Positions 832 to 64,000 of a DNA stretch of 64,000 bases are shown here, one piece after another. Every line of letters starts with the position of its first letter. Positions within the stretch are counted from its first letter, which is position 1. The stretch lies in assembly GCF_035084215.1 (NCBI RefSeq), contig NC_090351.1:33790001-33854000 (forward strand), written 5' to 3'. The stretch is from Heptranchias perlo (Eukaryota). The position numbers were made by a program, and so were the translations under genes. Under the pieces are notes generated by a model that was given only the letters and a program-made list of their open reading frames with translations, was not told where the DNA came from and searched no databases.

Positions 832-1155
832 CGTAAGATATTTGTAGTCGTAAGTTAAACCTTGGATCGATGCCAGATTGTTCAATACCACAGCTGTACC
901 ATCCTGTATCTCCCGAGCGAAGAGCCTTCATAGTAACAACGAATATTCCTTCTCTCTTGTTATCTGTGATTGACATTCTTCCTCGCTGTCCATCTTGCTC
1001 ACTTGTTTTTACTAAAACTGAACAACTACTAGTCCAGCCATGACACCAGTATTTCACATATGACCAGTACGTATGTTTGTCATAGTGACAGTCTATTGTG
1101 ATCGCTCTTCCCACAACTCCATTTACATTTTTTTTTGCCCACAATGCACCTGAAA
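832..1155 (-). CDS. Receptor copy 0, exon 2: CD300/pIgR/TREM-type Ig V domain (remaining exons lie left of the window)
   Basis: Acceptor tcttctcag|; VSGALWAKK..ITIDCHY..VKYWCHGWTSSCSVLV..DTGWYSCG; donor G|GTACTT; phase 1/1, 324 bp. Confidence 0.92.
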
Positions 1156-1299
1156 CTGAGAAGACAGCACTTCAGAAATTGAACAGGAAGTAACTGCTAA
1201 ATACAAACAGATACATTTTTATAAGAACTTCCACTGTGTACAGAAGAATCTCTCCACTACGTCCATTAATACAGTTGAATTCCTTGTAGTTTGTGATGA

Positions 1300-1392
1300 A
1301 AGAAAGAACATTAATTTCGTGCCTTATCACATCCTCACGATGTCCTAAAGCACTTCCCAGCCAGTGAATTACTTTTGAAGTGTCGTCACTAT
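1300..1392 (-). mobile_element. DeuSINE 3' tail fragment (in each unit)
   Basis: Reverse complement of cacttcaaaagtaattcactggctgggaagtgctttaggacatcgtgagg, homologous to the SINE tail at 12240-12326. Confidence 0.65.
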
Positions 1393-1400
1393 CTTTGAAC

Positions 1401-2005
1401 AAGAACAGCAACAACAGCTTGCATTTATATAGCACCGATAACATAGAAACTCAAGCTAAGACATAATCAAAATTAAATGGATACTGAGATAAGGCAGGAG
1501 ATATTAGGAGAGGTGTGTAACAGCCTGGTCAAAGAGGTGGGTTTTAAGGAGGGTCTTAAAGGAGGAGAGGTGGAGGATTTCATACAGGGAATTTCACAAT
1601 GTGGTGCCAAGTTGGTTGAAGGCAAACCCATTCCCACTAATGGTGGGGCAAAGGTAGGGATCGATGCACAAAAGATCACAGTCAGCGGAAGGGAGATTTC
1701 GTGAGGGAGTTGGTGAGTAGGGCTGAAGGAGGTTACTCAAATAGTGAGGGGCCATTTCATGAAGGAATTTAAACACAAGGATGAAAGTTTGAAGTTTTGA
1801 GAGACCGAAAGCCAATGTAGGTCAGCAAGGACAGGGGTGATAGATGAGCGGGACCTGATAGCAGAATTTTGGATGCGTTGATGTTTATGGTGGGTGCAAG
1901 AGGGGAGGCAGGCCAGGAGAACATTGGAATAGTTCAATCTGGAGGCAACAAAGACATGGATGTGGGTTTCAGCAGCAGACGGGTGGAAGTAGGCAGACTT
2001 TGTAA
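1401..2005 (-). mobile_element. L2-clade LINE 3' fragment in receptor intron 1 (in each unit)
   Basis: Translation AETHIHVFVASRLNYSN..LACLP..IQNSA..SITPVLADLHWL..LVFKFLH..APHYLSNLL is the L2 ORF2 C-terminus; (TTG)n-type tail. Confidence 0.85.
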
Positions 2006-2054
2006 TGAACTTGATATCTGCAGGAAAAGTGCTCCAGATTGTCTGTAAGATCAA

Positions 2055-2785
2055 TGAGCAAGACCTCGAGGGTATTAATCACAGGATTATTCCCAGTGCC
2101 ACATGGTAATCAGTATAAGAATAGTAAGATAAGAGAAGTAATTTTGTGACTGGAGAGATGGTTCAGAAGAAAAGGGTTCATATTCCTGGCACCTTGGGAC
2201 CAGGTGTGGAAGAGGAGCATCCTGTAGAGGACGGGAGGAGTTTACTTGAACAGCACCAAGACCAATGGCCTTGCTGGGAGAGGAACTCATGCTGTGGGCA
2301 AAGAGTTTACTCCCAAATGGCAGGAGGGTGGTTAAAAATAAGCTGAAGAGGCACGAGGAAGAGGACGGAGGGCTGAGGATATAGGATAGATAAAAGAGGG
2401 AAATGGGGAGGGGAAAGAGATCAGATCAGAAAGAGGAAGGTTTGAAAAGAGAAAGATTGCCATAACAGAGGCGTGCTTCAGTTGAATGTTCAAAAAGTAT
2501 TCTGCATAAAATTGGCAAGTTGAGGCACAAATATTTATGGGGAGGTTTGATATAATAGAATTAACAGACTCATGGCTTAGAGTAGGGTGAGACTGGGAGT
2601 TTAACATTGCTGGTTACAAAATAGATTAGTCCAAAATGGTGGCGGGGAGGCAGTATTAATCAGAAATTCCATTACAGCATTAAATCATAAAGATGATATG
2701 GGGCTGAATCTACTTGGTTAGAGTTAAAGAAGAAGAAGAAAACGGTTCCTTATTAGGAGAGTAATATCGACCAAACAGTGGGCGT
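2055..2785 (+). mobile_element. Degenerate CR1 LINE fragment (ORF1 esterase end + APE endonuclease start; in each unit)
   Basis: Broken frames resembling TSRVLITGLFPVP, DSWL..DWEFNIAGY, GGGEAVLIR, ESTWLELK, LLGExYRPNSG. Confidence 0.7.
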
Positions 2786-3243
2786 CCTCTCCCAGTGAGG
2801 AACAGTTTCACTGACAGAGCCTCGTTAAACAATATTTCATCGGCTGTACTTTAAATAACGAAAACAGTTGCAAATTTGTGACATTTTCTATTTGAGGGAT
2901 TATTACCACTGCAGTCTTCAGTGTATATTGGCCTTCAGACTACATTATAAAAGTCACTTTTTTACGGATTAAAACTGGTTGCCTTTGCATTTTGATTGTT
3001 GCTTTTGCAGCTTTTAAAAAAATGAAATGGAACCTTTATTTTCCACTCACAATTAAGAATGCATTTTCGTCTGGCAAATAATACAGTGAAAAAGAGATAC
3101 AAGACTATATGCAAATGTACTTCTGCTGAGTATTTTGTGCCTTTACATTTCTCCAAATATTTAAACATCTCTGCTGTTTAAACCATACACGAGACTTAAA
3201 CTAACACTGATTATCTGAATATCCAGCTCTGGCGGTCACTCAC

Positions 3244-3280
3244 CGGGCAGGGAACAAATGAGAAGAATCAGAATCCGCAT
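3244..3280 (-). CDS. Receptor copy 0 (partial gene), exon 1: signal peptide MRILILLICSLP
   Basis: ATG at 3280, hydrophobic leader, phase-1 donor G|GTGAGT at 3243. Confidence 0.85.
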
Positions 3281-3364
3281 TGTTTTATTCACAAAGAAGA
3301 GATCAGCACTTGTCGTCAGTCACCCAGCTCTTCGTTCTCATATCTAAATAAATATCTTCATGAT

Positions 3365-3430
3365 GCGAGGAATTTAAATGAGGAAGAAAGTAGCAGGAAG
3401 CCAGATCGTGAAACCGCAGGAAGCCAGCCG
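3365..3430 (-). promoter_or_regulatory. Putative leukocyte-type proximal promoter with ETS (GGAA) and RUNX motifs; repeated in each unit
   Basis: 90-145 bp upstream of the ATG: gaggaa twice, caggaag twice, aaccgca (RUNX consensus TGYGGT on the other strand) at 3412-3418. Confidence 0.45.
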
Positions 3431-3805
3431 ATGAAATGTTACCCCTGAGAACTTGAAATATTGTCAGTTATATTTAACAAACAAAACTAAACTAATTTTC
3501 ATCAATGAATAGAAAATTGTGAAAACAGGAATGTGAAAATGTTAACAGGAATGGAGAATGGCGACCCAAGCAAAGTATTTATGCTGAATTGTGAGGTGAC
3601 ATCCAGAACACAAGTGAGAAAAAAACCTCAGACAAGTGTTGAGATTGGCAGGAAGATTCAATCCCCTCTCCTTCCCACAGTGTACTGTGTATGGAAACTA
3701 GTTTCACAGATAAAACAGTTAATGCTGTGCTTATTAACAGCATGAAGAATGTCTGGCCACATAGTCGGAAATCCCTTAAAGTCACATGTTAAGTGTCAGA
3801 ATCAT

Positions 3806-4270
3806 ACCAACAACAACAACAACTTGCATTTATATAGCACCTTTAACACAATAAAATGTTTCACGGTGCTTCACAGGAGCGATTGTCATGCAAAATTTGG
3901 CACCAAGACACATAAGTCGATATTAGGACATGTGACTAAAAGCTTGGTCAAAGAGGTAGGTTTTAAGGAGCATCTTAAAGGAGGAGAGAGAGATAGAGAG
4001 GGGGAGAGGTTTAGGGAGGGAATTCCAGAGCTTAGGGCCAATGCAGCTGAGGGTACGGCCAGCAATGGTGGAGCGATTAAAATGGGGGATGCGCTAGAGT
4101 CAAGAATTGGAGGAGCGCAGAGATGGTGGTGGTGAGGTAGAGCTGGGTGTGATCAGCGTACATGTGGAATCTGACGATGTGTTTTCAGATGATGTCACCG
4201 AGGGGCAGCATGTAGATGAGAAATAGGTGGGTCCAAGGATAGATCCTTGTGGGACTCCAGAGGTAACATC
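3806..4270 (-). mobile_element. L2-clade LINE fragment with internal deletion (RT core joined to 3' UTR; in each unit)
   Basis: VTSGVPQGSILGP and FHMYADHTQLYL (YADD motif) next to the same 3' UTR and (TTG)n tail as 1401-1600. Confidence 0.85.
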
Positions 4271-4435
4271 GGGCACACTACCCATGATTTCCTGTTTGTT
4301 AACGTTAATGGATGGTGACATGGACTCTGGGACATTTCCAGCCACCATGTTCTTTCACATGGGTGTCGGGTTGTGGTACATTGTCCTAGTGTGCAGCACC
4401 ACACAGTAATGCACACAGTTCCACATCCACTGTTC

Positions 4436-5299
4436 GGGGTGAATTTTAACCTCAGGAACGGGTGGTTTGGGCGTGGTTGGGAAGGTAACAATTGTAAAAA
4501 TGTAAAGCCCGACCCCAACCTGCCCACTTCCGGTTATAACGGAGGCGGTTCGAGGGGTGGGCGACCAACCCGTTCTCAGGAGACGGGTCGGTCAGTGAAA
4601 GCTTTTAAGGAGGCTGCGGGCGTCCATTTTGAAAGATTTTTTATTTTCAACTCCTGGGGGCCGGGATTACCGGGCCTTCTGCTTCAGGCCACGTGAGAGG
4701 AGGCAAGAAGGCCTGGATCAGCAGTGAAGTGCTTTTATTGCATTGCTTGTGGGCCAGGAGGAGCAGGACTGCTTCCCCCAACAAGCTCACCTGCCGCGAT
4801 CGCACACATGCGGTCTCTGACACCCCCCCCAACTATCACCGAACCCCTCCCCCATGATCTCCGACACCCACCCCCCGAATGCCGCCCCCACCACGATTTC
4901 GAACCCCCCAATATCTGACCACCCATGCCTGAGCCCCTGATGAACCTCCCAATGATCACAGACTCTAATGAGCCCCCCTGATGACCGACCCCCACCAATG
5001 GCCGAGCCTCTGATGACCCTGACCCCGAACCCCCTGATGACATCGATGAGCAACTACCCCCGCCGGCCCCCATTTAATACTTTTGTGCTGGCATCTGCTA
5101 CCCCGCTGCTCCCCTGTCCGACTGATAGCCAGCTTGTCAATCCAGCTGGACTGTCGGGCAGAAAACCTGCAGAAAAAGAATGAAATACTTCCTTTCGTCA
5201 AAATCGTAAGGACGTCTGGGAAACCCGGACTTCTAGGTTTCCAGTCAGGATTTCTGACCCCCCTCCCATGACCTGGCTCCCTGGTAAAATTTTACTCCC
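4436..5299. mobile_element. Non-autonomous TIR element (MITE-like) with internal C-rich degenerate minisatellite (in each unit)
   Basis: Ends ggggtgaattttaacc / ggtaaaattttactccc are imperfect inverted repeats; ccccc(t/g)atga(t/c)c-like repeats at ~4810-5070. Confidence 0.55.
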
Positions 5300-5659
5300 T
5301 CGTCTCCAAAAGATAAGACTCTTCCCCATTGGCAGGGAAAGAAAATTAAAAGCAATTGTATCCTTGAACATTTTTAAGTCGCTCTTTGGATACAAAGGGC
5401 CCGAATTTAGCAGGCCTGCGGGTTCCCAGCGGGTGGTCCTCCGGGAGCGTGGTCAACACGCTCGGTGAAATTAGTGGGTTGCCCGCGCGATCGTAGCAGG
5501 CAACCCACTAATAGGAATCAATTACCTGCTCCTCCGGGGTCCACGGCGCTGGCCTGCGCGTCGGTCGGGCTGCGCATGCGCAGTACGATCTGTCAGCTGG
5601 AGGCTCTCTAGTTAAAGGGGCAGTCCTCCACTGACAGATGCTGCAACCAATGGGACAAA

Positions 5660-5911
5660 TTGCAGCATGGAGCAGCCCAGGGGGAAGGCTGCTCCCAGTT
5701 TAATGATGCCTCACCCCAGCTATCATCAGATGGGGTGAGGAGGAGGGGGAGGACACAGATCTTCCCCCCGGCGGGCGGGAGGAAGCGGCCTGCCTCTGCC
5801 ACCAAGAAGGCCTGGCTCGAGGTGGCAGAGGGGGTCACCTGCGCCACCAACATATCGCCCACCTGCATACAGTGCAGGAGGCGCTGCAATGACCGCAGTA
5901 GGTCAGCCGCA
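5660..5911 (+). pseudogene. Degenerate Myb/SANT DNA-binding exon of the Harbinger element
   Basis: Trihelix-like W-x-x-V-A and QC-R-R-R-x-x-D motifs; probable donor GTGAGA at 5912; start codon degraded (TTG). Confidence 0.7.
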
Positions 5912-6440
5912 GTGAGAACACGAAGTCTTTCCCCAACACTCCGTCTGCCACAACACTGCCCCCACCCCACATCTCCTTCGGCACCGCCAACACTATTCTG
6001 TCACATCACCCTTCATACCCACTCACACCCCATCCTCATCTTACCTCCACCTACTCACCTCGCCAGTACTCACCCTGCCACTAACACGCAACCCACTCCT
6101 CATACAATCTCATTGCTCCATCCCATACTCACCGTCTCGTGCATCTCCCTCACGGCCAGCCTCACTCAACCTGCCACCACCTGTGCTGCAGCCACAGGGC
6201 ATGCATCACATATGTGCAGTCGGCAGCGTAAGGCAAACGTCTCGTCAGCATGTGGGTGCACAAGGGTGTCTGAGGGTTTGTCATGGGTGTTACCCATATT
6301 GAATTTCAGAGCAACAAACAGCACACATTATATTGACACCACCACTGCCATGTCTCCGCGAATCCTGTCCGTTGTGACCAATAATGCCCGCTCCTGGGTA
6401 TCACTATGAGGACCCACCACTGATGCCACCCATCGTGTTA

Positions 6441-6800
6441 CTACAGAGTAGGTGCAGGTGTATTTGCAGGGCTCGTCCGCGCAGACGACTGAGAGACATC
6501 GGCGGTGTAGCCGGCTGCACCCTGGAAGGATGCGGAGGAGAGGTTGTGGAGGGCAGTGGTGACTTTGCCAGCGACAGGTAAGCAGTTGGTGCTGGGGCCA
6601 GCCAGGAGCAGCTCGGCATGAAAGAGGCTGCAGATCTCCACGACTACATGTCGAGCGAATCTGCGCCTCCCTGTGCACTGCTGCTCGGAGAGGTCCGGGG
6701 AGCTGCGCCTCGGTCTGTGGACCCCGTGGCGAGGGTAGTGCCCTCTGCGACGCGTCTCTCTCTGCGGTAGCCCTCCCTCCTGCTGTGCAGGTGGGCGTGC
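6441..6800 (-). pseudogene. Harbinger transposase (HARBI1-like) N-terminal remnant, catalytic DDE region absent
   Basis: C-terminal half of ORF 6441..7121 matches the HTH-containing N-terminus of Harbinger transposases; no IDGTH or DxGY motifs seen. Confidence 0.75.
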
Positions 6801-7447
6801 AACAACACCGTGTTGGGGGGATCCACGTCCCTGCGGCGGACGGCGTGGACTGCGAGGCTGCTGGGGCTGGTCATGCTCTTCGTCCTCCGAGGGTCTCCAC
6901 ACACCACCCAACTGGCAGGTGTTGGTCTGAGGGGTTGTGCAGGGTAGGTGTGTGGTTCCTCGGACTGGGGCTGCGGTTTCGTGTCGGTCTGTCCTCTGGC
7001 TTGGCGGGGGGTGGTGGAGGGCAGGGCTTGCCCTATGTGACGCGGTGGCCTCCTGCGTGGGTGAGGGCTCTCCCCCGTGGAGCGCACCTTGGCACCTGCC
7101 ACAGGCTGCTGGCTGCAACACGCCTGGTTGGAGGGAGACTGTTTCCCCCAGTGTGGGAAACTCACTGCCTTGAACCTAAAATCCCACACTTCCTCTTTTG
7201 ACAGCTGCTTCAGCTCATTAACTGACCACAACGAGCAAGGTAAGTACTCTCAAGTGGAACCCCGCTGGCTTTAATTGCCTGCGGGATTCCCACCAGCGGG
7301 GCTTGCGCGCGCAGCCCCGCACGTCAGCGCGGTACCCGGAAGTGGCCGGGATTTCGTCGCGATCCGGTCACGTGACCGGAGATCGGGATTTTCGGGGCCA
7401 CCCCACTGGGAACCCGCCGGAAACACGCTCCTAAAATCGAGTCCAAA

Positions 7448-8210
7448 GTGTCTTCGGGAGACTGGGATCAGCTGGGTGGCTGCTGTAGATTCCACTGAAG
7501 CTGGCACATGCTCCATTGGTGGCTGAAATGAAGAAAAAGCTTCCCCGATGTTGCTGCAGATGAGAACTGTAAACTCAAGTGTCACAGTTGTCAGTTGATC
7601 CACATCCTTGAACCCTGACCTTAGAGCCTGCATGTCGGTGTGATGTTCCTCAAACATCCTGCTTTTCAGGAAAGCATCCATGAGTTCGGGCTCTCAGGAC
7701 TCCAAAGGCAAAGGCAGCCTTCTCATCGGCCTCCACATGGACGGTGGCACATTGTTACCTACTTCTCACACCTCCAGCCCGCTTGTGCTCTGTGAATCAC
7801 CACACCCTCACAAAACACTATCTAATTTTCCTCGGGTGAATGTACCTGAGCTGGTGCCTGGGATTTAAGAAGAAGGTGACAATGGTGATGAGTTGAAAGG
7901 TGTTGGGACAGAGGAACAAGGGCCATAAGGTGTCTGCAGGAAATCATGGGTTGGCTTCATCATCATCCTGGTCTACTGGTGGGTCAAGGAGACAGAGAAA
8001 GCAGTGGACGCTTGTTGGCGTGTGACACTTCATAGAGATGCCAGGGCAATGGTGTTATGTTGGCAATATGCCCAGACCTCCCCATCTCCCATGGCACGAG
8101 GAGAGTGATTCCCCATGAGTTCCATGGCCTCCTCCTCGTAGGACAAGTGTTCTAAAGTTAAGTATGGCAACCCGCTGGGCATTGTGCACTGCTTTCTCCT
8201 GCAAGAGGAT
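7448..8210 (-). mobile_element. Possible older Harbinger Myb-gene remnant (downstream exons)
   Basis: ttgcag|EKAVHNAQ.. followed by YEEEAMELMG in a shifted frame resembles the second exon of Harbinger Myb/SANT proteins; heavily decayed. Confidence 0.35.
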
Positions 8211-8719
8211 GGAATAAATTAGGGGAAGGCTAGCAGCTGAGAGATGTGTGCCAAGTGTCTGAACCAGTTTGTGGGAGTTAAGAAGTAAGTGGGAGTTAAG
8301 GGAGTTGGGCAGGAGGTCTCTGCAGGAACTCATGGGTGTGCTTAAGTCTGACTTCATCTCCCTTCCCCCGCCAATGGCAGAGTTGAAGTAAGAGCTGGAG
8401 CCTGTTAGTGTTGACAAAGGGGTTTTAGGGTTGTGCATGGAAATAATTGCCTTTCGGGGAGATGGATAACCATAGTGTTGGATGCCAAGCTGGGAGCCCC
8501 TTAACCAGAGTGCATTGTGAAGGGTTAGTTGTGTTGCTGATACTTTTCGATGGTGAAGAGTGTGCTGGTGCCAGGGAAGTAAAGGCAGTGTGGCCAGTGT
8601 ATTACTTGCCAGTCCAGGTCAGGTCAGTAAAGTTCTTTGTATCTGGGGTTGAGAGTTGTTAGTCAGTGCTGGTGCTCCCTCCCTTCGGGTGGCACAGGTG
8701 ACATTTCAGGCACAAATCC

Positions 8720-8938
8720 CCTGCTTTTCTTCAAATTTTACCATGGGTCTCATATCCTCGGCAGACTGCACCTTGGCTTAACAACCAATCCAAGAGGCAG
8801 CACCTCTGACAGTGCAGCACTCGCTCAGTACAGCATTAAAGTGTCAGGCTACATTATGTGCTCAAAGCTCTGGAGTGGGGCCTGAACTCACAACCTTCTG
8901 ACTCAGAGGTGAGAGTGCTGCCACTGAGCCAAGGCTGA
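8720..8938 (-). mobile_element. tRNA-derived DeuSINE 5' half (in each unit)
   Basis: Reverse complement has A box TGGCTCAGTGG and B box GAGTTCAGGCC; homologous to 11911-12100. Confidence 0.8.
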
Positions 8939-9034
8939 AGCTCGTCTCTGGACCGAGATTCCCCTCAGACCCGGCCGTATTTCCAGCACTTGGTTATTTT
9001 ACACATGGGAGGTCGACTCATTGGTCACCATCTG

Positions 9035-9148
9035 TCAGGAAGCACATCTTCACACAAAGACTGGTGGAAATCTAGAACTCTCTTCCCAAAAACGCTGTTG
9101 AGGCTGGGGGTCAACTGAAAATTTCAAAACTGAGATTGATGAATTTTT
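9035..9148 (+). mobile_element. CR1 LINE 3' end fragment (3' tail deleted in units 1-2, complete in units 3-4)
   Basis: RKHIFTQRLVEIWNSLPQNAVEA (CR1 ORF2 C-terminus) visible in ORF 42525..42719; units 3-4 continue to ..actcctgttcctatgttcc. Confidence 0.8.
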
Positions 9149-9448
9149 CCCTCAGATCTAGCCGTGTTTCCTGCACTGGGTTCTTGTACATATGGGAGGC
9201 CAACTCCTTGGTCTCCACCTGATGGTCTGCGATTGATACCTTGCAGGCGTTTGGATCTTGCTGCGCAGGGAAATAGGTGGCCAGCAAGCTGTCTGATTCA
9301 AAAATATTTTCGTTTTCTTTAAAGCCTTCAAATTTTATTCGGGGCGCCTGTGCATGGCGGCACTCTGAGAGTTTTGTTGGCCCAGGGCCCCCTGCGCCGA
9401 TACCTGAACGTGACACACGTTATTTGTCTGTCAGCTGAAGAGATAAGG

Positions 9449-9561
9449 AGGGTAAAATTCGTCATGGGCATTACTGCAAAATGGACACCAGCAAAACAGC
9501 AGCCCATTTTACACTCCGCACAATTTTCTTTTCCATCGTGGCCCAAGACGAATTTCACCTC
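9449..9561. mobile_element. Miniature (~113 bp) fold-back/MITE (in each unit)
   Basis: agggtaaaattcgtcatgggc ... gcccaagacgaatttcacctc inverted repeat, plus inner gcaaaatgg/ccattttac. Confidence 0.65.
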
Positions 9562-11345: not shown

Positions 11346-11351
11346 TTTATT
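11346..11351 (-). terminator. Putative polyadenylation signal AATAAA of the receptor gene (also 28126, 45053, 61979)
   Basis: tttatt on + strand ~90 nt past the predicted stop codon. Confidence 0.5.
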
Positions 11352-53730: not shown

Positions 53731-53767
53731 CGGGCAGGGAACAAATGAGAAGAATCAGAATCCGCAT
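53731..53767 (-). CDS. Receptor copy C (45149-53767), exon 1: signal peptide
   Basis: Same as 3244-3280 at +50487. Confidence 0.85.
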
Positions 53768-55883
53768 TGTTTTATTCACAAAGAAGAGATCAGCACTTGT
53801 CGTCAGTCACCCAGCTCTTCGTTCTCATATCTAAATAAATATCTTCATGATGCGAGGAATTTAAATGAGGAAGAAAGTAGCAGGAAGCCAGATCGTGAAA
53901 CCGCAGGAAGCCAGCCGATGAAATGTTACCCCTGAGAACTTGAAATATTGTCAGTTATATTTAACAAACAAAACTAAACTAATTTTCATCAATGAATAGA
54001 AAATTGTGAAAACAGGAATGTGAAAATGTTAACAGGAATGGAGAATGGCGACCCAAGCAAAGTATTTATGCTGAATTGTGAGGTGACATCCAGAACACAA
54101 GTGAGAAAAAAACCTCAGACAAGTGTTGAGATTGGCAGGAAGATTCAATCCCCTCTCCTTCCCACAGTGTACTGTGTATGGAAACTAGTTTCACAGATAA
54201 AACAGTTAATGCTGTGCTTATTAACAGCATGAAGAATGTCTGGCCACATAGTCGGAAATCCCTTAAAGTCACATGTTAAGTGTCAGAATCATACCAACAA
54301 CAACAACAACTTGCATTTATATAGCACCTTTAACACAATAAAATGTTTCACGGTGCTTCACAGGAGCGATTGTCATGCAAAATTTGGCACCAAGACACAT
54401 AAGTCGATATTAGGACATGTGACTAAAAGCTTGGTCAAAGAGGTAGGTTTTAAGGAGCATCTTAAAGGAGGAGAGAGAGATAGAGAGGGGGAGAGGTTTA
54501 GGGAGGGAATTCCAGAGCTTAGGGCCAATGCAGCTGAGGGTACGGCCAGCAATGGTGGAGCGATTAAAATGGGGGATGCGCTAGAGTCAAGAATTGGAGG
54601 AGCGCAGAGATGGTGGTGGTGAGGTAGAGCTGGGTGTGATCAGCGTACATGTGGAATCTGACGATGTGTTTTCAGATGATGTCACCGAGGGGCAGCATGT
54701 AGATGAGAAATAGGTGGGTCCAAGGATAGATCCTTGTGGGACTCCAGAGGTAACATCGGGCACACTACCCATGATTTCCTGTTTGTTAACGTTAATGGAT
54801 GGTGACATGGACTCTGGGACATTTCCAGCCACCATGTTCTTTCACATGGGTGTCGGGTTGTGGTACATTGTCCTAGTGTGCAGCACCACACAGTAATGCA
54901 CACAGTTCCACATCCACTGTTCGGGGTGAATTTTAACCTCAGGAACGGGTGGTTTGGGCGTGGTTGGGAAGGTAACAATTGTAAAAATGTAAAGCCCGAC
55001 CCCAACCTGCCCACTTCCGGTTATAACGGAGGCGGTTCGAGGGGTGGGCGACCAACCCGTTCTCAGGAGACGGGTCGGTCAGTGAAAGCTTTTAAGGAGG
55101 CTGCGGGCGTCCATTTTGAAAGATTTTTTATTTTCAACTCCTGGGGGCCGGGATTACCGGGCCTTCTGCTTCAGGCCACGTGAGAGGAGGCAAGAAGGCC
55201 TGGATCAGCAGTGAAGTGCTTTTATTGCATTGCTTGTGGGCCAGGAGGAGCAGGACTGCTTCCCCCAACAAGCTCACCTGCCGCGATCGCACACATGCGG
55301 TCTCTGACACCCCCCCCAACTATCACCGAACCCCTCCCCCATGATCTCCGACACCCACCCCCCGAATGCCGCCCCCACCACGATTTCGAACCCCCCAATA
55401 TCTGACCACCCATGCCTGAGCCCCTGATGAACCTCCCAATGATCACAGACTCTAATGAGCCCCCCTGATGACCGACCCCCACCAATGGCCGAGCCTCTGA
55501 TGACCCTGACCCCGAACCCCCTGATGACATCGATGAGCAACTACCCCCGCCGGCCCCCATTTAATACTTTTGTGCTGGCATCTGCTACCCCGCTGCTCCC
55601 CTGTCCGACTGATAGCCAGCTTGTCAATCCAGCTGGACTGTCGGGCAGAAAACCTGCAGAAAAAGAATGAAATACTTCCTTTCGTCAAAATCGTAAGGAC
55701 GTCTGGGAAACCCGGACTTCTAGGTTTCCAGTCAGGATTTCTGACCCCCCTCCCATGACCTGGCTCCCTGGTAAAATTTTACTCCCTCGTCTCCAAAAGA
55801 TAAGACTCTTCCCCATTGGCAGGGAAAGAAAATTAAAAGCAATTGTATCCTTGAACATTTTTAAGTCGCTCTTTGGATACAAA

Positions 55884-57934
55884 GGGCCCGAATTTAGCAG
55901 GCCTGCGGGTTCCCAGCGGGTGGTCCTCCGGGAGCGTGGTCAACACGCTCGGTGAAATTAGTGGGTTGCCCGCGCGATCGTAGCAGGCAACCCACTAATA
56001 GGAATCAATTACCTGCTCCTCCGGGGTCCACGGCGCTGGCCTGCGCGTCGGTCGGGCTGCGCATGCGCAGTACGATCTGTCAGCTGGAGGCTCTCTAGTT
56101 AAAGGGGCAGTCCTCCACTGACAGATGCTGCAACCAATGGGACAAATTGCAGCATGGAGCAGCCCAGGGGGAAGGCTGCTCCCAGTTTAATGATGCCTCA
56201 CCCCAGCTATCATCAGATGGGGTGAGGAGGAGGGGGAGGACACAGATCTTCCCCCCGGCGGGCGGGAGGAAGCGGCCTGCCTCTGCCACCAAGAAGGCCT
56301 GGCTCGAGGTGGCAGAGGGGGTCACCTGCGCCACCAACATATCGCCCACCTGCATACAGTGCAGGAGGCGCTGCAATGACCGCAGTAGGTCAGCCGCAGT
56401 GAGAACACGAAGTCTTTCCCCAACACTCCGTCTGCCACAACACTGCCCCCACCCCACATCTCCTTCGGCACCGCCAACACTATTCTGTCACATCACCCTT
56501 CATACCCACTCACACCCCATCCTCATCTTACCTCCACCTACTCACCTCGCCAGTACTCACCCTGCCACTAACACGCAACCCACTCCTCATACAATCTCAT
56601 TGCTCCATCCCATACTCACCGTCTCGTGCATCTCCCTCACGGCCAGCCTCACTCAACCTGCCACCACCTGTGCTGCAGCCACAGGGCATGCATCACATAT
56701 GTGCAGTCGGCAGCGTAAGGCAAACGTCTCGTCAGCATGAAGGGGGTGCACAAGGGTGTCTGAGGGTTTGTCATGGGTGTTACCCATATTGAATTTCAGA
56801 GCAACAAACAGCACACATTATATTGACACCACCACTGCCATGTCTCCGCGAATCCTGTCCGTTGTGACCAATAATGCCCGCTCCTGGGTATCACTATGAG
56901 GACCCACCACTGATGCCACCCATCGTGTTACTACAGAGTAGGTGCAGGTGTATTTGCAGGGCTCGTCCGCGCAGACGACTGAGAGACATCGGCGGTGTAG
57001 CCGGCTGCACCCTGGAAGGATGAGGAGGAGAAGGTGTGGAGGGCAGTGGTGACTTTGCCAGCGACAGGTAAGCAGTTGGTGCTGGGGCCAGCCAGGAGCA
57101 GCTCGGCATGAAAGAGGCTGCAGATCTCCACGACTACATGTCGAGCGAGTCTGCGCCTCCCTGTGCACTGCTGCTCGGAGAGGTCCGGGGAGCTGCGCCT
57201 CGGTCTGTGGACCCTGTGGCGAGGGTAGTGCCCTCTGCGACGCGTCTCTCTCTGCGGTAGCCCTCCCTCCTGCTGTGCAGGTGGGCGTGCAACAACACCG
57301 TGTTGGGGGGATCCACGTCCCTGCGGCGGACGGCGTGGACTGCGAGGCTGCTGGGGCTGGTCATGCTCTTCGTCCTCCGAGGGTCTCCACACACCACCCA
57401 ACTGGCAGGTGTTGGTCTGAGGGGTTGTGCAGGGTAGGTGTGTGGTTCCTCGGACTGGGGCTGCGGTTTCGTGTCGGTCTGTCCTCTGGCTTGGCGGGGG
57501 GTGGTGGAGGGCAGGGCTTGCCCTATGTGACGCGGTGGCCTCCTGCGTGGGTGAGGGCTCTCCCCCGTGGAGCGCACCTTGGCACCTGCCACAGGCTGCT
57601 GGCTGCAACACGCCTGGTTGGAGGGAGACTGTTTCCCCCAGTGTGGGAAACTCACTGCCTTGAACCTAAAATCCCACACTTCCTCTTTTGACAGCTGCTT
57701 CAGCTCATTAACTGACCACAACGAGCAAGGTAAGTACTCTCAAGTGGAACCCCGCTGGCTTTAATTGCCTGCGGGATTCCCACCAGCGGGGCTTGCGCGC
57801 GCAGCCCCGCACGTCAGCGCGGTACCCGGAAGTGGCCGGGATTTCGTCGCGATCCGGTCACGTGACCGGAGATCGGGATTTTCGGGGCCACCCCGCTGTG
57901 AACCCGCCGGAAACACGCTCCTAAAATCGAGCCC
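55884..57934. mobile_element. Harbinger element, unit 4 copy (recombinant)
   Basis: Same TIRs/TSD; left half unit-1 alleles, right half unit-3 alleles. Confidence 0.88.
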
Positions 57935-60900
57935 AAAGTGTCTTCGGGAGACTGGGATCAGCTGGGTGGCTGCTGTAGATTCCACTGAAGCTGGCACATG
58001 CTCCATTGGTGGCTGAAATGAAGAAAAAGCTTCCCCGATGTTGCTGCAGATGAGAACTGTAAACTCAAGTGTCACAGTTGTCAGTTGATCCACATCCTCG
58101 GACCCTGACCTCAGAGCCTGCATGTCGGTGTGATGTTCCTCAAACATCCTGCTTTTCAGGAAAGTATCCATGAGTTCGGGCTCTCAGGACTCCAAAGGCA
58201 AAGGCAGCCTTCTCATCGGCCTCCACATGGACGGTGGCACATTGTTACCTACTTCTCACACCTCCAGCCCCCTTGTGCTCTGTGAATCACCACACCCTCA
58301 CAAAACACTATCTAATTTTCCTCGGGTGAATGTACCTGAGCTGGTGCCTGGGATTTAAGAAGAAGGTGACAATGGTGATGAGTTGAAAGGTGTTGGGACA
58401 GAGGAACAAGGGCCATAAGGTGTCTGCAGGAAATCATGGGTTGGCTTCATCACCATCCTGGTCTACTGGTGGGCCAAGGAGACAGAGAAAGCAGTGGACG
58501 CTTGTTGGCGTGTGACACATCATAGAGATGCCAGGGCAATGGTGTTATGTTGGCAATGTGCCCAGACCTCCACATCTCCCATGGCACGAGGAGAGTGATT
58601 CCCCATGAGTTCCATGGCCTCCTCCTCGTAGGACAAGTGTTCTAAAGTTAAGGATGGCACCCCCGCTGGGCATTGTGCACTGCTTTCTCCTGCAAGAGGA
58701 TGGAATAAATTAGGGGAAGGCCAGCAGCAGAGAGATGTGTGCCAAGTGTCTGAACCAGTTTGTGGGAGTTAAGAAGCAAGTGGGAGTTAAGGGAGTTGGG
58801 CAGGAGGTCTCTGCAGGGACTCATGGGTGTGCTTGAGTCTGGCTTCATCTCCTTTCCGCCCCCTGCCATGGCAGAGTTGAAGTAAGAGCTGGAGCCTGTT
58901 AGTGTTGACAAAGGGTTTTTAGGATTGTGCATGCAAGTAATTCCCTTTCGGGGAGATGGGTCGCCATAATGTTAGATCCCAAGCTGGGAGCCCCTTAACC
59001 AGAGTGCATTGTGAAGGGTTAGTTGTGTTGCTGCTACTTTTAGATGGTGAAGAGTGTGCTGATGCCAGGGATATAAAGGGAGTGTGGCCAGTGTATTACT
59101 TGCTGGCCCTGGTCAGGTCATTAAAGTTCTTTGGCTCTTGGGTGAGAGTTTTTAGTCACTGCGAGTGCCATTTCCCTTCGGCTGGCACAGGTGATATTTC
59201 TGGCACAACTCCCCTGCTTTTCTTCAAATAATACCATGGGTCTCATATCCTCGGCAGACTGGACCATGGCTTAAAAACCAATCCGAGAGGCAGCACCTCT
59301 GACAGTGCAGCACTCGCTCAGTACAGCATTAAAGTGTCAGGCTACATTATGTGCTCAAATCTCTGGAGTGGAGCCTGAGCTCACAACCTTCTGACTCAGA
59401 GGTGAGAGTGCTGCCACTGAGCCAAGGCTGAAGCTCGTCTCTGGACTGAGATTCCCCTCAGACCCGGCCGTATTTCCAGCACTTGGTTATTTTACACAGG
59501 GGAGGTCGACTCATTGGTCACCATCTGTCAGGAAGCACATCTTCACACAAAGACTGGTGGAAATCTGGAACTCTCTCCCCCAAAACGCTGTTGAGGCTGG
59601 GGGTCAGTTGAAAATTTCAAAACTGAGATTGATGAATTTTTGTTAGGTTCGGGCATTAAGGGATATGGAACCAAGGTGGGTAAATGGAGTTAAGATCAGC
59701 CCATGATCTAATTGAATGGCAGGGCAGGACGACTCCTGTTCCTATGTTCCGATGACTGACATTTCCCTCAGATCTAGCCGTATTTTCTGCACTGGGTTCT
59801 TATACATATGGGAGGCCAACTCCTTGGTCTCCACCTGATGGTCTGCGATTGATACCTTGCAGGCGTTTGGATCTTGCTGCGCAGGGAAATAGGTGGCCAG
59901 CAAGCTGTCTGATTCAAAAATATTTTCGTTTTCTTTAAAGCCTTCAAATTTTATTCGGGGCGCCTGTGCATGGCGGCACTCTGAGAGTTTTGTTGGCCCA
60001 GGGCCCCCTCCGCCGATACCTGAACGTGACACACGTTATTTGTCTGTCAGCTGAAGAGATAAGGAGGGTAAAATTCGTCATGGGCATTAGTGCAAAATGG
60101 ACACCAGCAAAACAGCAGCCCATTTTACACTCTGCACGATTTTCGTTTCCATCGTGGCCCAAGACGAATTTCACCTCGAATTTACACTGGAAATCTGTCT
60201 TATTTATTTGTGTACCTGATGGGTAAAAGTTTCATTGTTGACCCTGTAGCCCTCATCCCAAATTACTTTACCATAAGGTCATGTTTCAGTTCATTGGCAG
60301 CGTGTGCCTGAATCATAACAGGCATGAAATGCATGGAGGAAGTAGTGAATTTTTGAATCTTCTCCTGATCGATAATAAGTTTTTGGAAACTGAAAAATGA
60401 TGAGAGAATTCTGAAGAAATGCTGTAAATTTATTTTAAGTCTCTGCATTATTTTTGTCAGTGCCCAGCTAAGTAAATGTCTTGTCATGTACACCTGCATT
60501 CAGACCTGTTGTTCTGTTTCTTCTTCTCTCCCCTTAACCCTTCCTTTTCCCAGTTAAAATGCAAACTTGTCCCATTGATGTAATGAGACAGTTAGAGGAG
60601 CGGTAAAGGTGAGTTTTCTCACTTATAATTTACTCCTCATATCAATAGTTTTCATAACATTGAATGTCAGATGTCACAGATTTATTAAGTCTACACCTGC
60701 ATTTAAACATACACTTAACAGCAGTACTTACGACAAGAACCTTAAGAGTTAAGTCGGAGGACTCAAACGCGTTACAATTCCAACCTCAGTATGTTGGTTG
60801 CAGATCATAATCGAGTCCCGAGTATCTGTTCCAACACCTACTTTTTACACCTTTTTCTTACCCCCTCTACGAGACAGTCCACACGTTACTGTATTACCAA

Positions 60901-62074
60901 ATACAAGTCCATATAAGGTGAATATTAATGATCTGCTTCCTTTGTTCCTTATCAATAATTTTAGCTTTTATCCAGTTATTTTTCCATAGATTGGTACAAT
61001 TCCCCAACCTTTTTATCTTATCAAAGCTTCACTCTTGTTGCTAATCCATCAAGTGAAACTACTAATTTTAAATCTGGACCATGCCATACCAATCTCTTGC
61101 TTCTAAAAAGGATGATGTGTTTGCAGATATTTCCTTCTGCAGCAACTGATTAAAGTTCTCTGGAGTAAGCACTGGAATGTTTTTAATTAGGTTTATTCTC
61201 GAAACTGACCATTGCTTTAAGGTCAGTCTTAATTCAACAGTTCATTGGTCACTGCATCTAAATTGACTTACACTTCCTCACTCAACAGGCAAGAGCTAAA
61301 GGTTACTATTACTACAATATAAAGAGAAATCAGTAACAGCATAACATTGGCAGATTTCAGGACAATCTGATTAACATAAATTAATGAGGCCCCCCGCCTG
61401 CTTTAGTGAGGCAACTCATCCACATGCAGAATCTTGCAGGTTCAAATCTGAAATGGCACGAATAGGTCGGGACCTGAGGGGGAGGTTTCTAACGACCTAT
61501 CCGCTCGGTTAAAGTCAACCCCTCCGTTTTTTATAAAACACACTCAATATTAATTTTAACCCAATAAAGCTTTTGAAATTTATCCTCTTCTTCCTCAAAA
61601 TTATTTGAAGAAAAATGACTGAGCCGAAATGCTCGATGATTAAGAGAAATATTCCATTTGTACAGCTGACTGAATTGTCCTATTGCATCCTATGAAATTA
61701 GCTACACTATAACTACACTGCATCATATGACTACACTTCGGCAAATCCTTTACAAATGCAGACATATAATATGAAAAATTGACACAAAAAGTGTGACAAA
61801 AATTTTACAAAAGGAAGCCAGGTTGTGCAGACAGAAAGTGGCCACAGACATAAATTTTTAATACGATCGAGATAGATCGAAAGATAGCCACCAATTCGAA
61901 GCACGCAGCCATCATTTTAGTTTTGATTTTTTTCTCCACTAATTTAATAGTCAAGTTCATTTAATGACCAATTCCATTTTTATTGTACATTTGGTAAAAC
62001 GGGAAAGCTGGATGAACAATGAATATTTGATCAGGACACAAAATTCCATCAAGGTAGATGCAATCAGGAAATCT

Positions 62075-62122
62075 TCATCTTGCCACGTTGGCCGACCTGT
62101 GGTGATCTGATTCGTTGAGTAG
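62075..62122 (-). CDS. Receptor copy D, exon 6: cytoplasmic tail
   Basis: Copy of 11442-11489 at +50633. Confidence 0.65.
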   Translation of the reverse strand, partial: LLNESDHHRSANVAR

Positions 62123-63027
62123 CTGAAAGTGAAAATATTTAATGCATCAGATTCATTGATATTGAGAAGTGTGCGTTATTTTACATGTCAGTTCTGAACA
62201 GAATTCTATCTGAAACTGTTAACAAGTTGAGGAAAGGCCTGCGATAGACTGGAGCTGTGTTGAGATCACACTCCTCCCTCCCCCATCACCATTGCACGTG
62301 TGCTGGGAAAAGGTGTCAGTTGTGCCCCTTTTGCTGGAACACCATTTTCTCACATTCAACATGGGTTTTTCTGCAACCGTGACGGTGGACAGTTGACATC
62401 AGAAAACGGTTGACTTTATTAAATATATTTTAGATAGTCCAGTTGAGGTTCCCAGCAACAATAGAATTAGGTCTGTGTCTGAGCACCCTGGTGCTCGACT
62501 GGATAAACAAATCAGAATGGAATCTTTTCTTGACTGTATTAGTACAGCTTGGCTCAGTGGTAGCACTCTCATTTCAGATGTCAAAAGGTTGTGGGTTCAA
62601 GTCCCAGTCCAGGGACTTCAGCACATAATCTAGGCTGGCACTTCAGCACTGTGCTGAGGGAGTGCTCTATTGTCAGATGAAACGTTAATGGAGGGCCCCA
62701 TCTGTTTGTTCAGGTGGACAGAAAAGATTCCATGACACTATTTGAAGAAGAGCAAAGGAGTTCTCCCAATATTCTGGCCAAAACAGATTAACCGGTCATT
62801 TATCTCATCTGCTGTGTTTGGGACCTTTCTGTGTGCAAATTGTCTGCCACTTTTGTCTCCATAACAACAGTAACACTTCAAAAGTAACTCATTGGATGTA
62901 AAGAGATTGGGACATCTTGAAGATATAAAAGAGTCTATATAAACGCAGGTTCTTTCTTTATTATATCTGTGACAAATATTTTTGAAAGAATTTTTGGAGT
63001 GTTTCATACAAAGTCCTTAATCCTTAC

Positions 63028-63118
63028 CTTAGTTTTTCTCGTACACGTTGTGACCGAAACAGTACAAATCACCAGGAGAGCAAAGAGCACCCAGCGTAGC
63101 ACACTCCACACAATGTAA
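63028..63118 (-). CDS. Receptor copy D, exon 5: transmembrane
   Basis: Copy of 12395-12485 at +50633 (R allele). Confidence 0.88.
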
Positions 63119-63976
63119 CTGAGCAAAAGGGGAGAAATACAAAATCATTCACAAGAAACGGGATTGCTTTGTGTCTGAAACATTTATCTCCTGTTTACAC
63201 TGTAATCTTAGTATTTTGTATCAATGTAAAGCCGCAGAACCAAGGGACTTTAGCTGGGAAACTAAACTGTTGTTTGACTTATGGAGGAAAGTCAACTTTG
63301 TGATCATTAGATAAAGGCCAAATGAAGCAAAGTTCATTAACATGTCCACAATGTGCAGCTATAAAGGCACGGCACAATTTTATAATTGAGGACTTTATAA
63401 AAGTGACTGACCATCTGCCTGGGGCCATGTAACAGTGGTAATATGTCTCCTCAGGGATGATCACAATAACATCAACCTGCAACTGCTCATCTGCACCTTC
63501 TTTCAGGCAATTGCTGAGCAGCTGGAAACAGGCAGCCTTCCCGTTCTCTCAGTTTGGAAACAGTGTATAACATGGGCAAACTGAGAAGGTGAAAATGACG
63601 GAGAATGCAAATGCCACTCCAGAATAGTGGAAGGCAAACCAGCATTGCTGGGGTTTGGCAAGTACAACTCATCTCACGCCATGAGATTAGGTTAGCGGTA
63701 AAGTAATGAAGGTGAATAATGCAAACAGCACCACCTGAGGGGTGGCAAAATGGAGGTGCTTACTTCTTATTCTGATTCTCCACCAACAAAAATAGCACCT
63801 TTGTTCGGAAGCCAACACAACAGCATGATGTAAATCCAGCCACCATTTCCATTATGGTGAGTTATAGCCTGGATGAGTAAATGTTTGTGAACCCTTGTGC
63901 CAAATTTCTTAAAGAACATTTATTCTCTCAGATGGAAACAGTGCCAATCAAAACACCAGCAATGAGAACATTGTAC

Positions 63977-64000
63977 CTTTTGCTGGCAGATGTGGAACCT
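63977..64000 (-). CDS. Receptor copy D (partial), 3' part of exon 4, cut by the window edge
   Basis: Copy of the exon 4 end at +50633. Confidence 0.75.

What the first reader, a model, noticed from the sequence alone, without database searches (positions are those of the whole stretch)
832..64000. Very recent tandem amplification of an activating-type Ig-superfamily immune receptor (at least 5 gene copies, ~16.8 kb period)
Seen: every period holds one intact six-exon gene with consistent splice phases (37+324+324+124+91+48 = 948 nt, 315 aa) and no stops or frameshifts, and the V domain translation is identical in all four visible copies. Known: CD300/pIgR-like/MDIR clusters are multigene families whose members are usually well diverged. 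Inference: a near-clonal array of one receptor points to a very young dosage amplification or strong concerted evolution, and probably to copy-number polymorphism like KIR/LILR/CHIR, here in a probable cartilaginous fish.
Basis: partly seen in the sequence, partly recalled or inferred. Interest (0 to 1): 0.85.

Follow-up and report, generated by a model that had tools for sequence, protein, structure and literature searches.

The report
Near-identical shark activating-receptor gene array
A sevengill shark chromosome carries a head-to-tail run of almost identical, transcribed copies of one activating-type immune receptor gene of the shark-and-ray MDIR family, a pattern already familiar from natural-killer-type receptor clusters of other vertebrates.

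Summary
The window is a head-to-tail repeat with a period of 16,780-16,927 bp. It holds three complete and two cut copies of a six-exon minus-strand gene (37+324+324+124+91+48 nt). Every visible copy is intact, and the V exon is identical in 4 of 4 copies. RNA-like contigs from the same animal show all five splice joints; the DNA run shows none of the three joints tabulated.

The gene is an activating-type member of the elasmobranch MDIR family. It has a pIgR/CD300-type V domain, an FCRL-like C2 domain, an arginine in the membrane span and a tyrosine-free tail. The genome is Heptranchias perlo or a very close relative. An ITIM-tailed partner, XP_067863712.1, has a 91-96% identical ectodomain.

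The array is not uniformly young. Unit divergence runs from 0.07% to about 1.2%, and locally from 0 to 6% (index of dispersion 11, p about 1e-55). One unit is a recombinant. This fits repeated unequal crossing-over or gene conversion rather than a single burst.

Not tested: copy number from read depth or spanning reads, variation between individuals, any dosage effect.

First readers of this scan noted the same cluster in both overlapping neighbour windows.

The parts
1..16780 (.). Repeat unit U1 (type alpha)
   Evidence: 12 substitutions against U2 over 16,780 bp.
16781..33560 (.). Repeat unit U2 (type alpha)
33561..50487 (.). Repeat unit U3 (type beta, 16,927 bp, with 3+3+123+18 bp of extra sequence)
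   Evidence: 194 substitutions against U1 or U2; the differences are clustered.
50488..64000 (.). Repeat unit U4 (cut by the window end). A recombinant: identical to U1 over its first 6,251 bp, U3-like from about 6,000 to 11,500.
832..3280 (-). Gene copy A, 5' part only: e1 3280-3244 and e2 (V) 1155-832. Exons 3-6 lie left of the window.
11442..20060 (-). Gene copy B, complete: e1 20060-20024, e2 17935-17612, e3 14577-14254, e4 13467-13344, e5 12485-12395, e6 11489-11442. Carries the R variant in e3 and the K variant in e5.
   Evidence: All five splice joints are seen in RNA-like contigs.
28222..36840 (-). Gene copy C, complete: e1 36840-36804, e2 34715-34392, e3 31357-31034, e4 30247-30124, e5 29265-29175, e6 28269-28222. 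Q in e3, R in e5.
45149..53767 (-). Gene copy D, complete: e1 53767-53731, e2 51642-51319, e3 48284-47961, e4 47174-47051, e5 46192-46102, e6 45196-45149. Q in e3, R in e5.
62075..63118 (-). Gene copy E, 3' part only: e5 63118-63028 and e6 62122-62075. Exons 1-4 lie right of the window.
12395..12485 (-). Transmembrane exon with an Arg at position 8 of a 21-residue hydrophobic span, followed by a basic stop-transfer stretch.
   Evidence: The same W-x-V-x-R-W motif is in 39 of 245 fetched relatives, including skate MDIR5.
11315..11356 (-). Polyadenylation-signal hexamers 90-126 nt after the stop codon of copy B.
4000..8600 (.). G+C-rich block (GC 0.56-0.57) in the intergenic part of each unit, 0.7-5.3 kb upstream of e1. 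Its nature is unknown.
   Evidence: 0 of 8 long open frames tested (7 of them in or beside this block) match Pfam. CpG observed/expected 0.56.

Best explanation
This is a real tandem array of one activating-type MDIR gene in the sevengill shark Heptranchias perlo. Each unit of about 16.8 kb carries one transcribed six-exon gene. The gene encodes a signal peptide, a pIgR/CD300-type V domain, an FCRL-like C2 domain, a stalk, a membrane span with an arginine and a short tail without tyrosine. By analogy with other paired receptors, the arginine would dock a signalling adaptor of the FcR-gamma or DAP12 kind (inferred). The receptor would then send an activating signal on binding the same or a similar ligand as the neighbouring ITIM-tailed partner, whose ectodomain is 91-96% identical. 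The array grew by unequal crossing-over between units. Its gene-bearing segments are kept almost identical by continued unequal exchange or gene conversion, so it is a case of concerted evolution on an older duplication plus very recent duplications. Shown here: the repeat, the intact genes, the splicing, the family, the inhibitory partner and the mosaic divergence. Inferred: adaptor coupling, any dosage benefit, and copy-number variation.
For: Repeat and unit identities. Exons intact in every visible copy, with only 2 variable exon positions. Splicing: the joints 14577>17612 and 13466>14253 appear in 3 of 3 RNA-like runs and 12485>13344 in 2 of 3. All have GT..AG ends on the minus strand, and 0 of 1 DNA run shows them. 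Loose ends equal e1 (window 20025-20052) and e6 (window 11460-11489). Domains: V-set E 6.6e-11 and Ig_2 E 8.2e-07; pIgR and CLM-1 are the best solved relatives of the V exon; FCRL5 is the best for the C2 exon. Family: the paralogue P0020 finds skate MDIR3, MDIR5 and MDIR2. Exon-wise, V is 61% identical to MDIR2, C2 57-58% to MDIR3 and MDIR5, and the TM exon 50% to MDIR5. The Arg-TM module is conserved in 39 of 245 fetched shark and ray proteins. Inhibitory partner: P0020 (XP_067863712.1) has an uncharged membrane span and four ITIM/ITSM-like Tyr motifs. Species: the window's e2 and e3 translations are exact substrings of H. perlo XP_067863714.1, and e5 and e6 of P0154, which names H. perlo 'polymeric immunoglobulin receptor-like'. 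Mosaic divergence: index of dispersion 11.0, chi-square 353 on 32 df, and a recombinant U4. More unit types in the reads than in the window: contigs of DNA run X1 mix alpha and beta letters and carry variants absent from all window copies.
Against: The copy number rests on the assembly alone. The DNA runs come from the same animal, probably the one assembled, and were available only as contigs, so no spanning read or single-copy depth control was seen. The U1-U2 divergence of 0.07% is below the nucleotide diversity reported for another shark (0.002, PMC10587355 passages), so it is no larger than allelic differences. The private letters of U1 (12405 T) and U2 (17947 A) do not appear in the X1 contigs, though such contigs drop rare variants. 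I saw no separate 315-residue model of this gene among the 245 proteins fetched; only a chimeric isoform carries its first three exons. Both coding differences change an amino acid, and the cleanliness of the exons is shared by their introns, so there is no direct sign of purifying selection. No adaptor, ligand or cell type was tested.
Confidence: 0.7

Rival explanations
1. Assembly artefact. The true haplotype has fewer units (for example one alpha and one beta), and the assembler laid allelic or mis-resolved copies in tandem.
For: U1-U2 differ at only 12 of 16,780 sites, and U1-U4 at 0 of the first 6,251. That is at or below the heterozygosity reported for another shark. The private letters of U1 and U2 are not seen in the X1 contigs. 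I could not examine spanning reads or depth against a single-copy control.
Against: The window has no N. The longest identical run between any two units is 6,251 bp, and 3,333 bp for U1-U2, so reads of 10 kb or more could tell the units apart. The X1 contigs need at least a third unit type and hold exon-4 variants (37.8 of 84.9 depth) that are absent from 3 of 3 window copies. RNA contigs show at least two V-exon versions. First readers of both neighbouring windows report further copies (unchecked).
Confidence: 0.12
2. A single, very recent amplification burst, with no homogenisation afterwards.
For: Overall identity is 98.8-99.9%. All genes are intact.
Against: Differences between unit types are far from evenly spread. 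Counts are 5 of 4,000 at positions 1-4000 and 6 of 3,500 at 11001-14500, against 69 of 1,144 at 8001-9145, 42 of 1,854 at 9146-11000 and 38 of 2,280 at 14501-16780. The index of dispersion is 11.0 with p about 9e-56. The 6% tract is not driven by CpG decay. U4 is a mosaic of alpha and beta.
Confidence: 0.08
3. The array is real but selectively neutral: a by-product of an unstable, repeat-rich receptor cluster, with no dosage function. Some copies may be silent.
For: There is no evidence of selection. The 2 coding differences are both non-synonymous, and the introns are as clean as the exons. Contigs cannot assign expression to single copies. Another shark's gene model holds a similar near-identical internal repeat, 516 of 529 residues, which suggests this cluster duplicates readily.
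Against: All visible copies keep promoter-proximal sequence, splice sites and frames. Transcripts identical to the window copies exist: X7 record 25 has 0 differences over e3-e2. The Arg-TM module is conserved between sharks and rays.
Confidence: 0.25

Closest known systems
Modular domain immune-type receptors (MDIR) of the clearnose skate (MDIR2, MDIR3, MDIR5; Cannon et al. 2006, Immunogenetics 58:362; paper not held, seen only as a citation and in passages of PMC3031540)
   Same: Same domain modules and order: a pIgR/CD300-type V domain, then a C2-type domain, a stalk and a membrane span. Both activating (Arg-TM, MDIR5) and inhibitory (ITIM, MDIR2) forms exist. Exon-wise identity is 51-61% for V and C2 and 50% for the TM exon.
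   Different: A different order of elasmobranchs. Here one member is present as a run of near-identical tandem copies. I do not know whether the 2006 paper reports such arrays, because I could not read it.
Mammalian CD300 (CMRF35-like) family and pIgR
   Same: V-domain type: four cysteines and a YWC motif. Best solved relatives are pIgR and CLM-1/CD300f, with CLM-1 at E 1e-19. CD300 also comes as activating and inhibitory pairs (PMC3031540 passages).
   Different: CD300 proteins have a single V domain. pIgR has several V-type domains and a long trafficking tail. This gene has one V domain plus an FCRL-like C2 domain and a 20-odd-residue tail.
Paired NK/myeloid receptor clusters with tandem expansion and copy-number variation (KIR, LILR/PIR, Ly49, chicken CHIR, teleost NITR/LITR); recalled, not tested here
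   Same: Activating members with a basic TM residue and a short tail sit beside ITIM partners with near-identical ectodomains. Tandem arrays are shaped by unequal crossing-over and gene conversion.
   Different: Unrelated or only distantly related Ig domains. Here the copies carry the same ectodomain (V exon 4 of 4 identical) rather than a diversified set.
FCRL5 and other Fc receptor-like proteins
   Same: The C2 exon aligns best to the repeated membrane-proximal domains of FCRL5, including the GSLPI-x-Y-x-W/F-Y stretch.
   Different: FCRL proteins have no CD300-type V domain. The NCBI names 'Fc receptor-like protein 5' given to shark relatives are automatic.

Membership tests
MDIR (modular domain immune-type receptors of elasmobranchs) | Significant sequence similarity to the named skate MDIR proteins over the ectodomain modules | tested here: met
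   V exon against MDIR2 61% (E 3e-47), MDIR5 60%, MDIR3 55-63%. C2 exon against MDIR3 58%, MDIR5 57-58%, MDIR2 51%; the paralogue P0020 finds MDIR3, MDIR5 and MDIR2 at E 4.5e-179 to 6.4e-82.
MDIR (modular domain immune-type receptors of elasmobranchs) | Multigene family with both activating (charged TM, short tail) and inhibitory (ITIM) members | tested here: met
   Window gene: Arg in the TM and no Tyr in the tail. P0020 of H. perlo: uncharged TM and four Tyr motifs of ITIM/ITSM type. Skate MDIR5 has the Arg-TM, and MDIR2 has Tyr motifs of ITIM type.
MDIR (modular domain immune-type receptors of elasmobranchs) | The definition as given in the original paper (domain typing, nomenclature) | not testable with these tools
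   PMC3701310 is not held. Only passages of PMC3031540 that cite it were read.
CD300 / CMRF35-like molecules | V-type domain with two disulfide bonds and a YWC(R) motif | tested here: met
   The V exon translation has four Cys and the stretch KYWCH. CLM-1 E 1e-19. The feature is as described in PMC3031540 passages.
CD300 / CMRF35-like molecules | A single Ig domain in the ectodomain | tested here: not met
   A second, C2-type domain is encoded by e3 and is spliced to the V exon in RNA contigs.
Polymeric immunoglobulin receptor | Several pIgR-type V domains and a long cytoplasmic tail | tested here: not met
   One V domain only. The tail after the TM span is about 20 residues.
Activating paired immune receptor (functional class) | A basic residue within the membrane span and a short tail without ITIM or ITAM | tested here: met
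   The e5 and e6 translations contain no Tyr after the span.
Activating paired immune receptor (functional class) | Association with an ITAM-bearing adaptor (FcR-gamma, DAP12 or CD3-zeta type) | not testable with these tools
   Needs co-expression and co-precipitation. I did not search for the shark adaptors, because I had no tool-given query sequence.
Activating paired immune receptor (functional class) | An inhibitory counterpart with a closely similar ectodomain in the same genome | tested here: met
   P0020 against the window exons: V 90.7%, C2 96.3%, stalk 84.6%. The chimeric model P0152 joins the window-type e1-e3 to the P0020 gene, which implies they are neighbours.
Recent tandem segmental amplification | Three or more head-to-tail units of high identity, each with the gene | tested here: met
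Recent tandem segmental amplification | Independent read support: spanning reads, and depth that is a multiple of single copy | tested here: inconclusive
   One search gave contigs only, from the same animal, without a single-copy control. The contigs do show at least three unit variants.
Recent tandem segmental amplification | Copy-number polymorphism among individuals | not testable with these tools
   All 8 listed runs come from one sample.

The most novel reading that the evidence does not exclude
In one of the oldest living shark lineages, a single activating MDIR has been multiplied into a homogenised array of perhaps ten or so identical genes beside one ITIM partner. Recurrent unequal exchange keeps the array uniform, the youngest duplications are younger than typical allelic coalescence, and copy number therefore still segregates. 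This would be a KIR/Ly49-style arms-race locus, but one that amplifies dosage of one specificity instead of diversifying it.
Probability: 0.25. Interest if true: 0.6.

Novelty: new member of a known kind. Interest (0 to 1): 0.42.

Why it matters
MDIRs are barely studied. In the held library only one paper (PMC3031540) mentions them. The copies in this window seem to lack their own protein model among the sequences I could fetch. A transcribed, near-clonal array of an activating receptor next to its inhibitory partner shows that the dynamics known from mammalian, bird and teleost innate receptor clusters also operate in a basal shark lineage. Those dynamics are paired receptors, unequal crossing-over and gene conversion. 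The locus also gives a concrete place to test copy-number variation and dosage. The kind of system is nonetheless well known, so a specialist would be interested rather than surprised.

Tried and rejected
The G+C-rich 4-8.6 kb block as a second gene: 0 of 8 long open frames tested (7 of them in or beside the block) match Pfam. There are no Rfam matches in 1-17000, only two small tandem repeats, and one 70-nt SINE-like direct repeat. Its nature is left open.

CpG decay as the cause of the 6% tract at 8001-9145: rejected. Only 7 of 69 differences lie in a CpG context.

Purifying selection as the reason for clean exons: exon sites are poorer in differences (2 of 948 against 192 of 15,830; Fisher p 0.0016). 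But the introns in the same tracts are just as clean, so homogenisation explains it.

Copy number from depth: not possible. The one read-laying run returned contigs with no single-copy control.

Reading the original MDIR paper and a review: neither is held. Supplementary files were not consulted. They could hold MDIR gene lists or the shark assembly methods that bear on novelty and on assembly quality.

A species-labelled tree of V domains was considered and dropped. Identities already separate the H. perlo paralogues (87-94%) from the best hit of another species named in these calls (67%, P0199 of Heterodontus francisci). In one search, 70% hits from another species also exist.

All searches used single-exon translations by reference, or natural database proteins (P0020, P0152, P0154). 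No structure prediction was run.

Full report
**What is in the window.** The whole 64-kb window is a head-to-tail repeat with no N. Composition already shows a period of about 17 kb. Self-megablast gives offsets of 16,780 and 16,909 bp.

I cut the window into units U1 (1-16780), U2 (16781-33560), U3 (33561-50487) and U4 (50488-64000, cut by the window end) and aligned them. The substitution counts were:
- U1-U2: 12 of 16,780 (0.072%)
- U3-U4: 35 of 13,513 (0.26%)
- U1 or U2 against U3: 194 of 16,778 (1.16%)
- U1 or U2 against U4: 130-134 of 13,365 (about 1.0%)

U3 and U4 carry four small insertions (3, 3, 123 and 18 bp). So there are two unit types, alpha (U1, U2) and beta (U3, U4).

**The gene.** I read the DNA and scanned for the small exons.

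In copy B the exons are at 20060-20024, 17935-17612, 14577-14254, 13467-13344, 12485-12395 and 11489-11442. The phases are 1, 1, 1, 2, 0. Every intron has GT-AG ends, and polyadenylation hexamers lie 90-126 nt after the stop.

The window holds three complete copies (B, C, D), the 5' part of a fourth (A: e1, e2) and the 3' part of a fifth (E: e5, e6). All visible exons are open and keep their splice sites: e1 4 of 4, e2 4 of 4, e3 3 of 3, e4 3 of 3, e5 4 of 4, e6 4 of 4.

The V exon is identical at the nucleotide level in 4 of 4 copies. Only two exon positions vary, and both change the protein: R/Q in the C2 domain (1 against 2 copies) and K/R just inside the membrane (1 against 3 copies).

**Is it transcribed and spliced as modelled?** The look-up of sequencing runs listed four DNA-like and four RNA-like runs, all from one sample. 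The RNA-like runs hold 9-12% of the sampled words of the 8.7-kb gene, roughly its exon share. I laid three RNA-like runs and one DNA run on window 12000-17990 (all runs are contigs).
- The RNA-like runs cover the exons and almost nothing between them.
- Joint 14577>17612 (e2-e3) appears in 3 of 3 RNA-like runs.
- Joint 13466>14253 (e3-e4, cut +1) appears in 3 of 3.
- Joint 12485>13344 (e4-e5) appears in 2 of 3.
- The skipped parts end CT..AC on the plus strand, which is GT..AG on the minus strand.
- The DNA run shows none of these joints.
- Loose ends at 12395 (X5, X6) equal window 11460-11489, the start of e6. The loose end at 17936 (X6) equals window 20025-20052, the end of e1.

So all five junctions are seen in transcripts. 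One contig (X7 record 25, 864 nt) matches the window over e3-e2 with 0 differences. Others (X5 record 10, X6 record 20) differ at five V-exon places, so at least one further paralogue is expressed. That these runs are RNA is the tool's guess; the joints and the empty introns support it.

- The V exon is a V-set domain (E 6.6e-11). Its best solved relatives are pIgR and CD300f/CLM-1. It has the four cysteines and the YWC motif that PMC3031540 (passages) gives for CD300-type domains.
- The second exon is a C2-type domain (Ig_2, E 8.2e-07). It is closest to the repeated domains of FCRL5.
- Exon 5 encodes a 21-residue hydrophobic span with an arginine at position 8.
- The remaining tail (end of e5 plus e6) has no tyrosine.

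**Relatives of the V exon.** An exhaustive HMMER search with the V exon found 2,318 proteins at E up to 0.001. The closest single-domain hit, P0020 (91% identical), is XP_067863712.1 of Heptranchias perlo. It has the same signal peptide and an almost identical V-C2-stalk, but an uncharged membrane span and a long tail with four ITIM/ITSM-like tyrosine motifs. Exon-wise identity to the window is 90.7% for V, 96.3% for C2 and 84.6% for the stalk.

**Relatives of P0020.** Searching with residues 1-270 of P0020, a natural protein, gave 114 hits. Most were from sharks and rays, with six bony-fish proteins among the weakest. The hits include the clearnose skate proteins named modular domain immune-type receptor 3, 5 and 2. 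Directly, the window's V, C2 and TM exons are 51-61%, 51-58% and 50% identical to those MDIRs. The motif W-x-V-x-R-W in the membrane span occurs in 39 of 245 fetched proteins, among them skate MDIR5.

The gene is therefore an activating-type MDIR, and the V-plus-C2 'hybrid' is the normal MDIR build. It is not a CD300 (which has a single domain), not a pIgR and not an FCRL.

**Which genome.** The translations of e2 and of the Q form of e3 are exact substrings of H. perlo XP_067863714.1 (P0152). Those of e5 (R form) and e6 are exact substrings of P0154, a protein that names H. perlo 'polymeric immunoglobulin receptor-like'. The window thus comes from H. perlo or something nearly identical, which agrees with earlier notes that call the genome a sevengill shark.

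P0152 is a predicted isoform that joins e1-e3 of a window-type gene to the V exon and the rest of the inhibitory gene, so the two genes are neighbours. P0154 is a four-domain V-C2-V-C2 Arg-TM receptor. No fetched protein contains the window's stalk exon (0 of 245). I therefore saw no separate model of the 315-residue gene. That is not proof that none exists.

**How the array evolved.** Differences between alpha and beta units are far from evenly spread:

| Unit positions | Content | Differences |
|---|---|---|
| 1-4000 | V exon, intron 1, e1, promoter-proximal DNA | 5 of 4,000 |
| 4001-6000 | intergenic | 17 of 2,000 |
| 6001-8000 | intergenic | 17 of 2,000 |
| 8001-9145 | intergenic | 69 of 1,144 (6.0%) |
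| 9146-11000 | intergenic | 42 of 1,854 |
| 11001-14500 | e3 to e6 with their introns | 6 of 3,500 |
| 14501-16780 | intron 2 | 38 of 2,280 |

Over 33 bins of 500 bp the index of dispersion is 11.0 (chi-square 353, 32 df, p about 9e-56). The 6% tract is not due to CpG decay, since only 7 of 69 differences lie in a CpG context.

U4 is identical to U1 over its first 6,251 bp but follows U3 from about 6,000 to 11,500. Exons have fewer differences than the rest (2 of 948 against 192 of 15,830, Fisher p 0.0016), but the introns around them are equally clean. So the cause is homogenisation of whole segments, not selection on codons.

The simplest history has three parts: an older alpha/beta duplication, later unequal exchanges or conversions that reset the gene-bearing segments, and very recent duplications (U1-U2, U3-U4).

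With the only direct shark mutation rate I could find, 0.07% corresponds to about 5e5 generations without homogenisation. That rate is 7e-10 per bp per generation in the epaulette shark, 95% CI 1.4-14.1e-10 (PMC10587355, passages). So 'very recent' holds only in units of divergence. It is also below that species' nucleotide diversity (0.002). This makes a still-segregating duplication plausible but does not show it.

**Is the copy number real?** This is the weak point. The runs come from one animal and were served as contigs, and my single reads call had no single-copy stretch to compare with.

Points for a real array:
- The window has no gaps.
- The longest identical run between two units is 6,251 bp, so long accurate reads could resolve it.
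- The DNA contigs carry beta letters at some places and alpha letters at neighbouring places (14917 against 14957 and 14960; ten of the U3 letters between 14917 and 16514, but not the others). This needs at least a third unit type.
- The contigs hold variants found in none of the window's copies. For example, three exon-4 variants account for 37.8 of 84.9 depth.

Points against:
- The letters private to U1 (12405) and U2 (17947) are not in the contigs, although contigs drop rare variants.
- U1-U2 differ no more than alleles might.

I put a real multi-copy array at about 0.85 and an inflated copy number at about 0.12.

**Context.**
- First readers of the two overlapping neighbour windows described more of the same cluster (unchecked): an ITIM gene with Arg-TM genes before the window, and further activating copies plus a V-C2-V-C2 gene after it.
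- A gene model of another shark, Mustelus asterias XP_078098046.1, has an internal repeat of 529 residues with 516 identical. Near-identical tandem duplication may be common in this cluster, or gene models may read through such arrays.
- In the held library only PMC3031540 mentions MDIRs.
- No listed title in the search for H. perlo genome papers concerns immune receptors (20 papers hold the terms, 12 listed).
- The original MDIR paper is not held.

**Verdict.** The array is better described as concerted evolution plus very recent duplications than as one young burst. Dosage, polymorphism and the true copy number remain untested. This is a new, apparently unmodelled member of a known family behaving in a known way, of moderate interest.

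Noticed in passing
window 13344-13290 (minus strand), and the same place in copies C and D: If the donor of the stalk exon is not used, the frame runs on for 16 mostly hydrophobic codons to a stop that is followed at once by AATAAA. This is a possible short hydrophobic-tailed (GPI-signal-like) or secreted isoform. No RNA contig shown tests it.
   Followed up: partly
window 17236-17681: An RNA-like contig (X6 record 18, 446 nt, depth 11.8) runs from the end of the V exon 376 nt into intron 2 with 16 differences from the window. It is an unspliced or alternatively ended transcript of a paralogue outside the window.
   Followed up: no
window 17929-17941 and equivalents: Two acceptor AGs lie 6 nt apart at the start of the V exon. 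The H. perlo isoform P0151 of the inhibitory partner lacks exactly the two residues (V, S) that the upstream acceptor adds.
   Followed up: no
P0152 (XP_067863714.1); its first three exons match window copies C and D: A predicted isoform splices e1-e3 of a window-type activating gene onto the V exon of the downstream inhibitory gene, giving V-C2-V-C2 with an ITIM tail. It could be a real read-through transcript or a gene-model artefact.
   Followed up: partly
window 4000-8600, repeated in each unit: A G+C-rich block (0.56-0.57, CpG observed/expected 0.56) has long open frames in several frames but no Pfam or Rfam match. Its nature is unknown.
   Followed up: partly
window 8001-9145 against 41566-42712: This is the most divergent tract between unit types (6.0%, as many transversions as transitions). 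It includes SINE-like sequence and ends at a 123-bp indel. It may be an old tract or one converted from a distant copy.
   Followed up: partly
window 13349, 13364, 13385 (exon 4) and 12723-12799 (intron 5): DNA contigs of run X1 carry alternative letters at 37-45% of the local depth that no copy in the window has. One of them (13385) is also in an RNA-like contig. Further expressed copies of the gene must lie elsewhere.
   Followed up: partly
window 1500-1569 and 3919-3988; also 8780-8950 and 11940-12060: SINE-like elements are scattered through the unit, with very high depth in all runs at 16400-16600. They were not classified.
   Followed up: no
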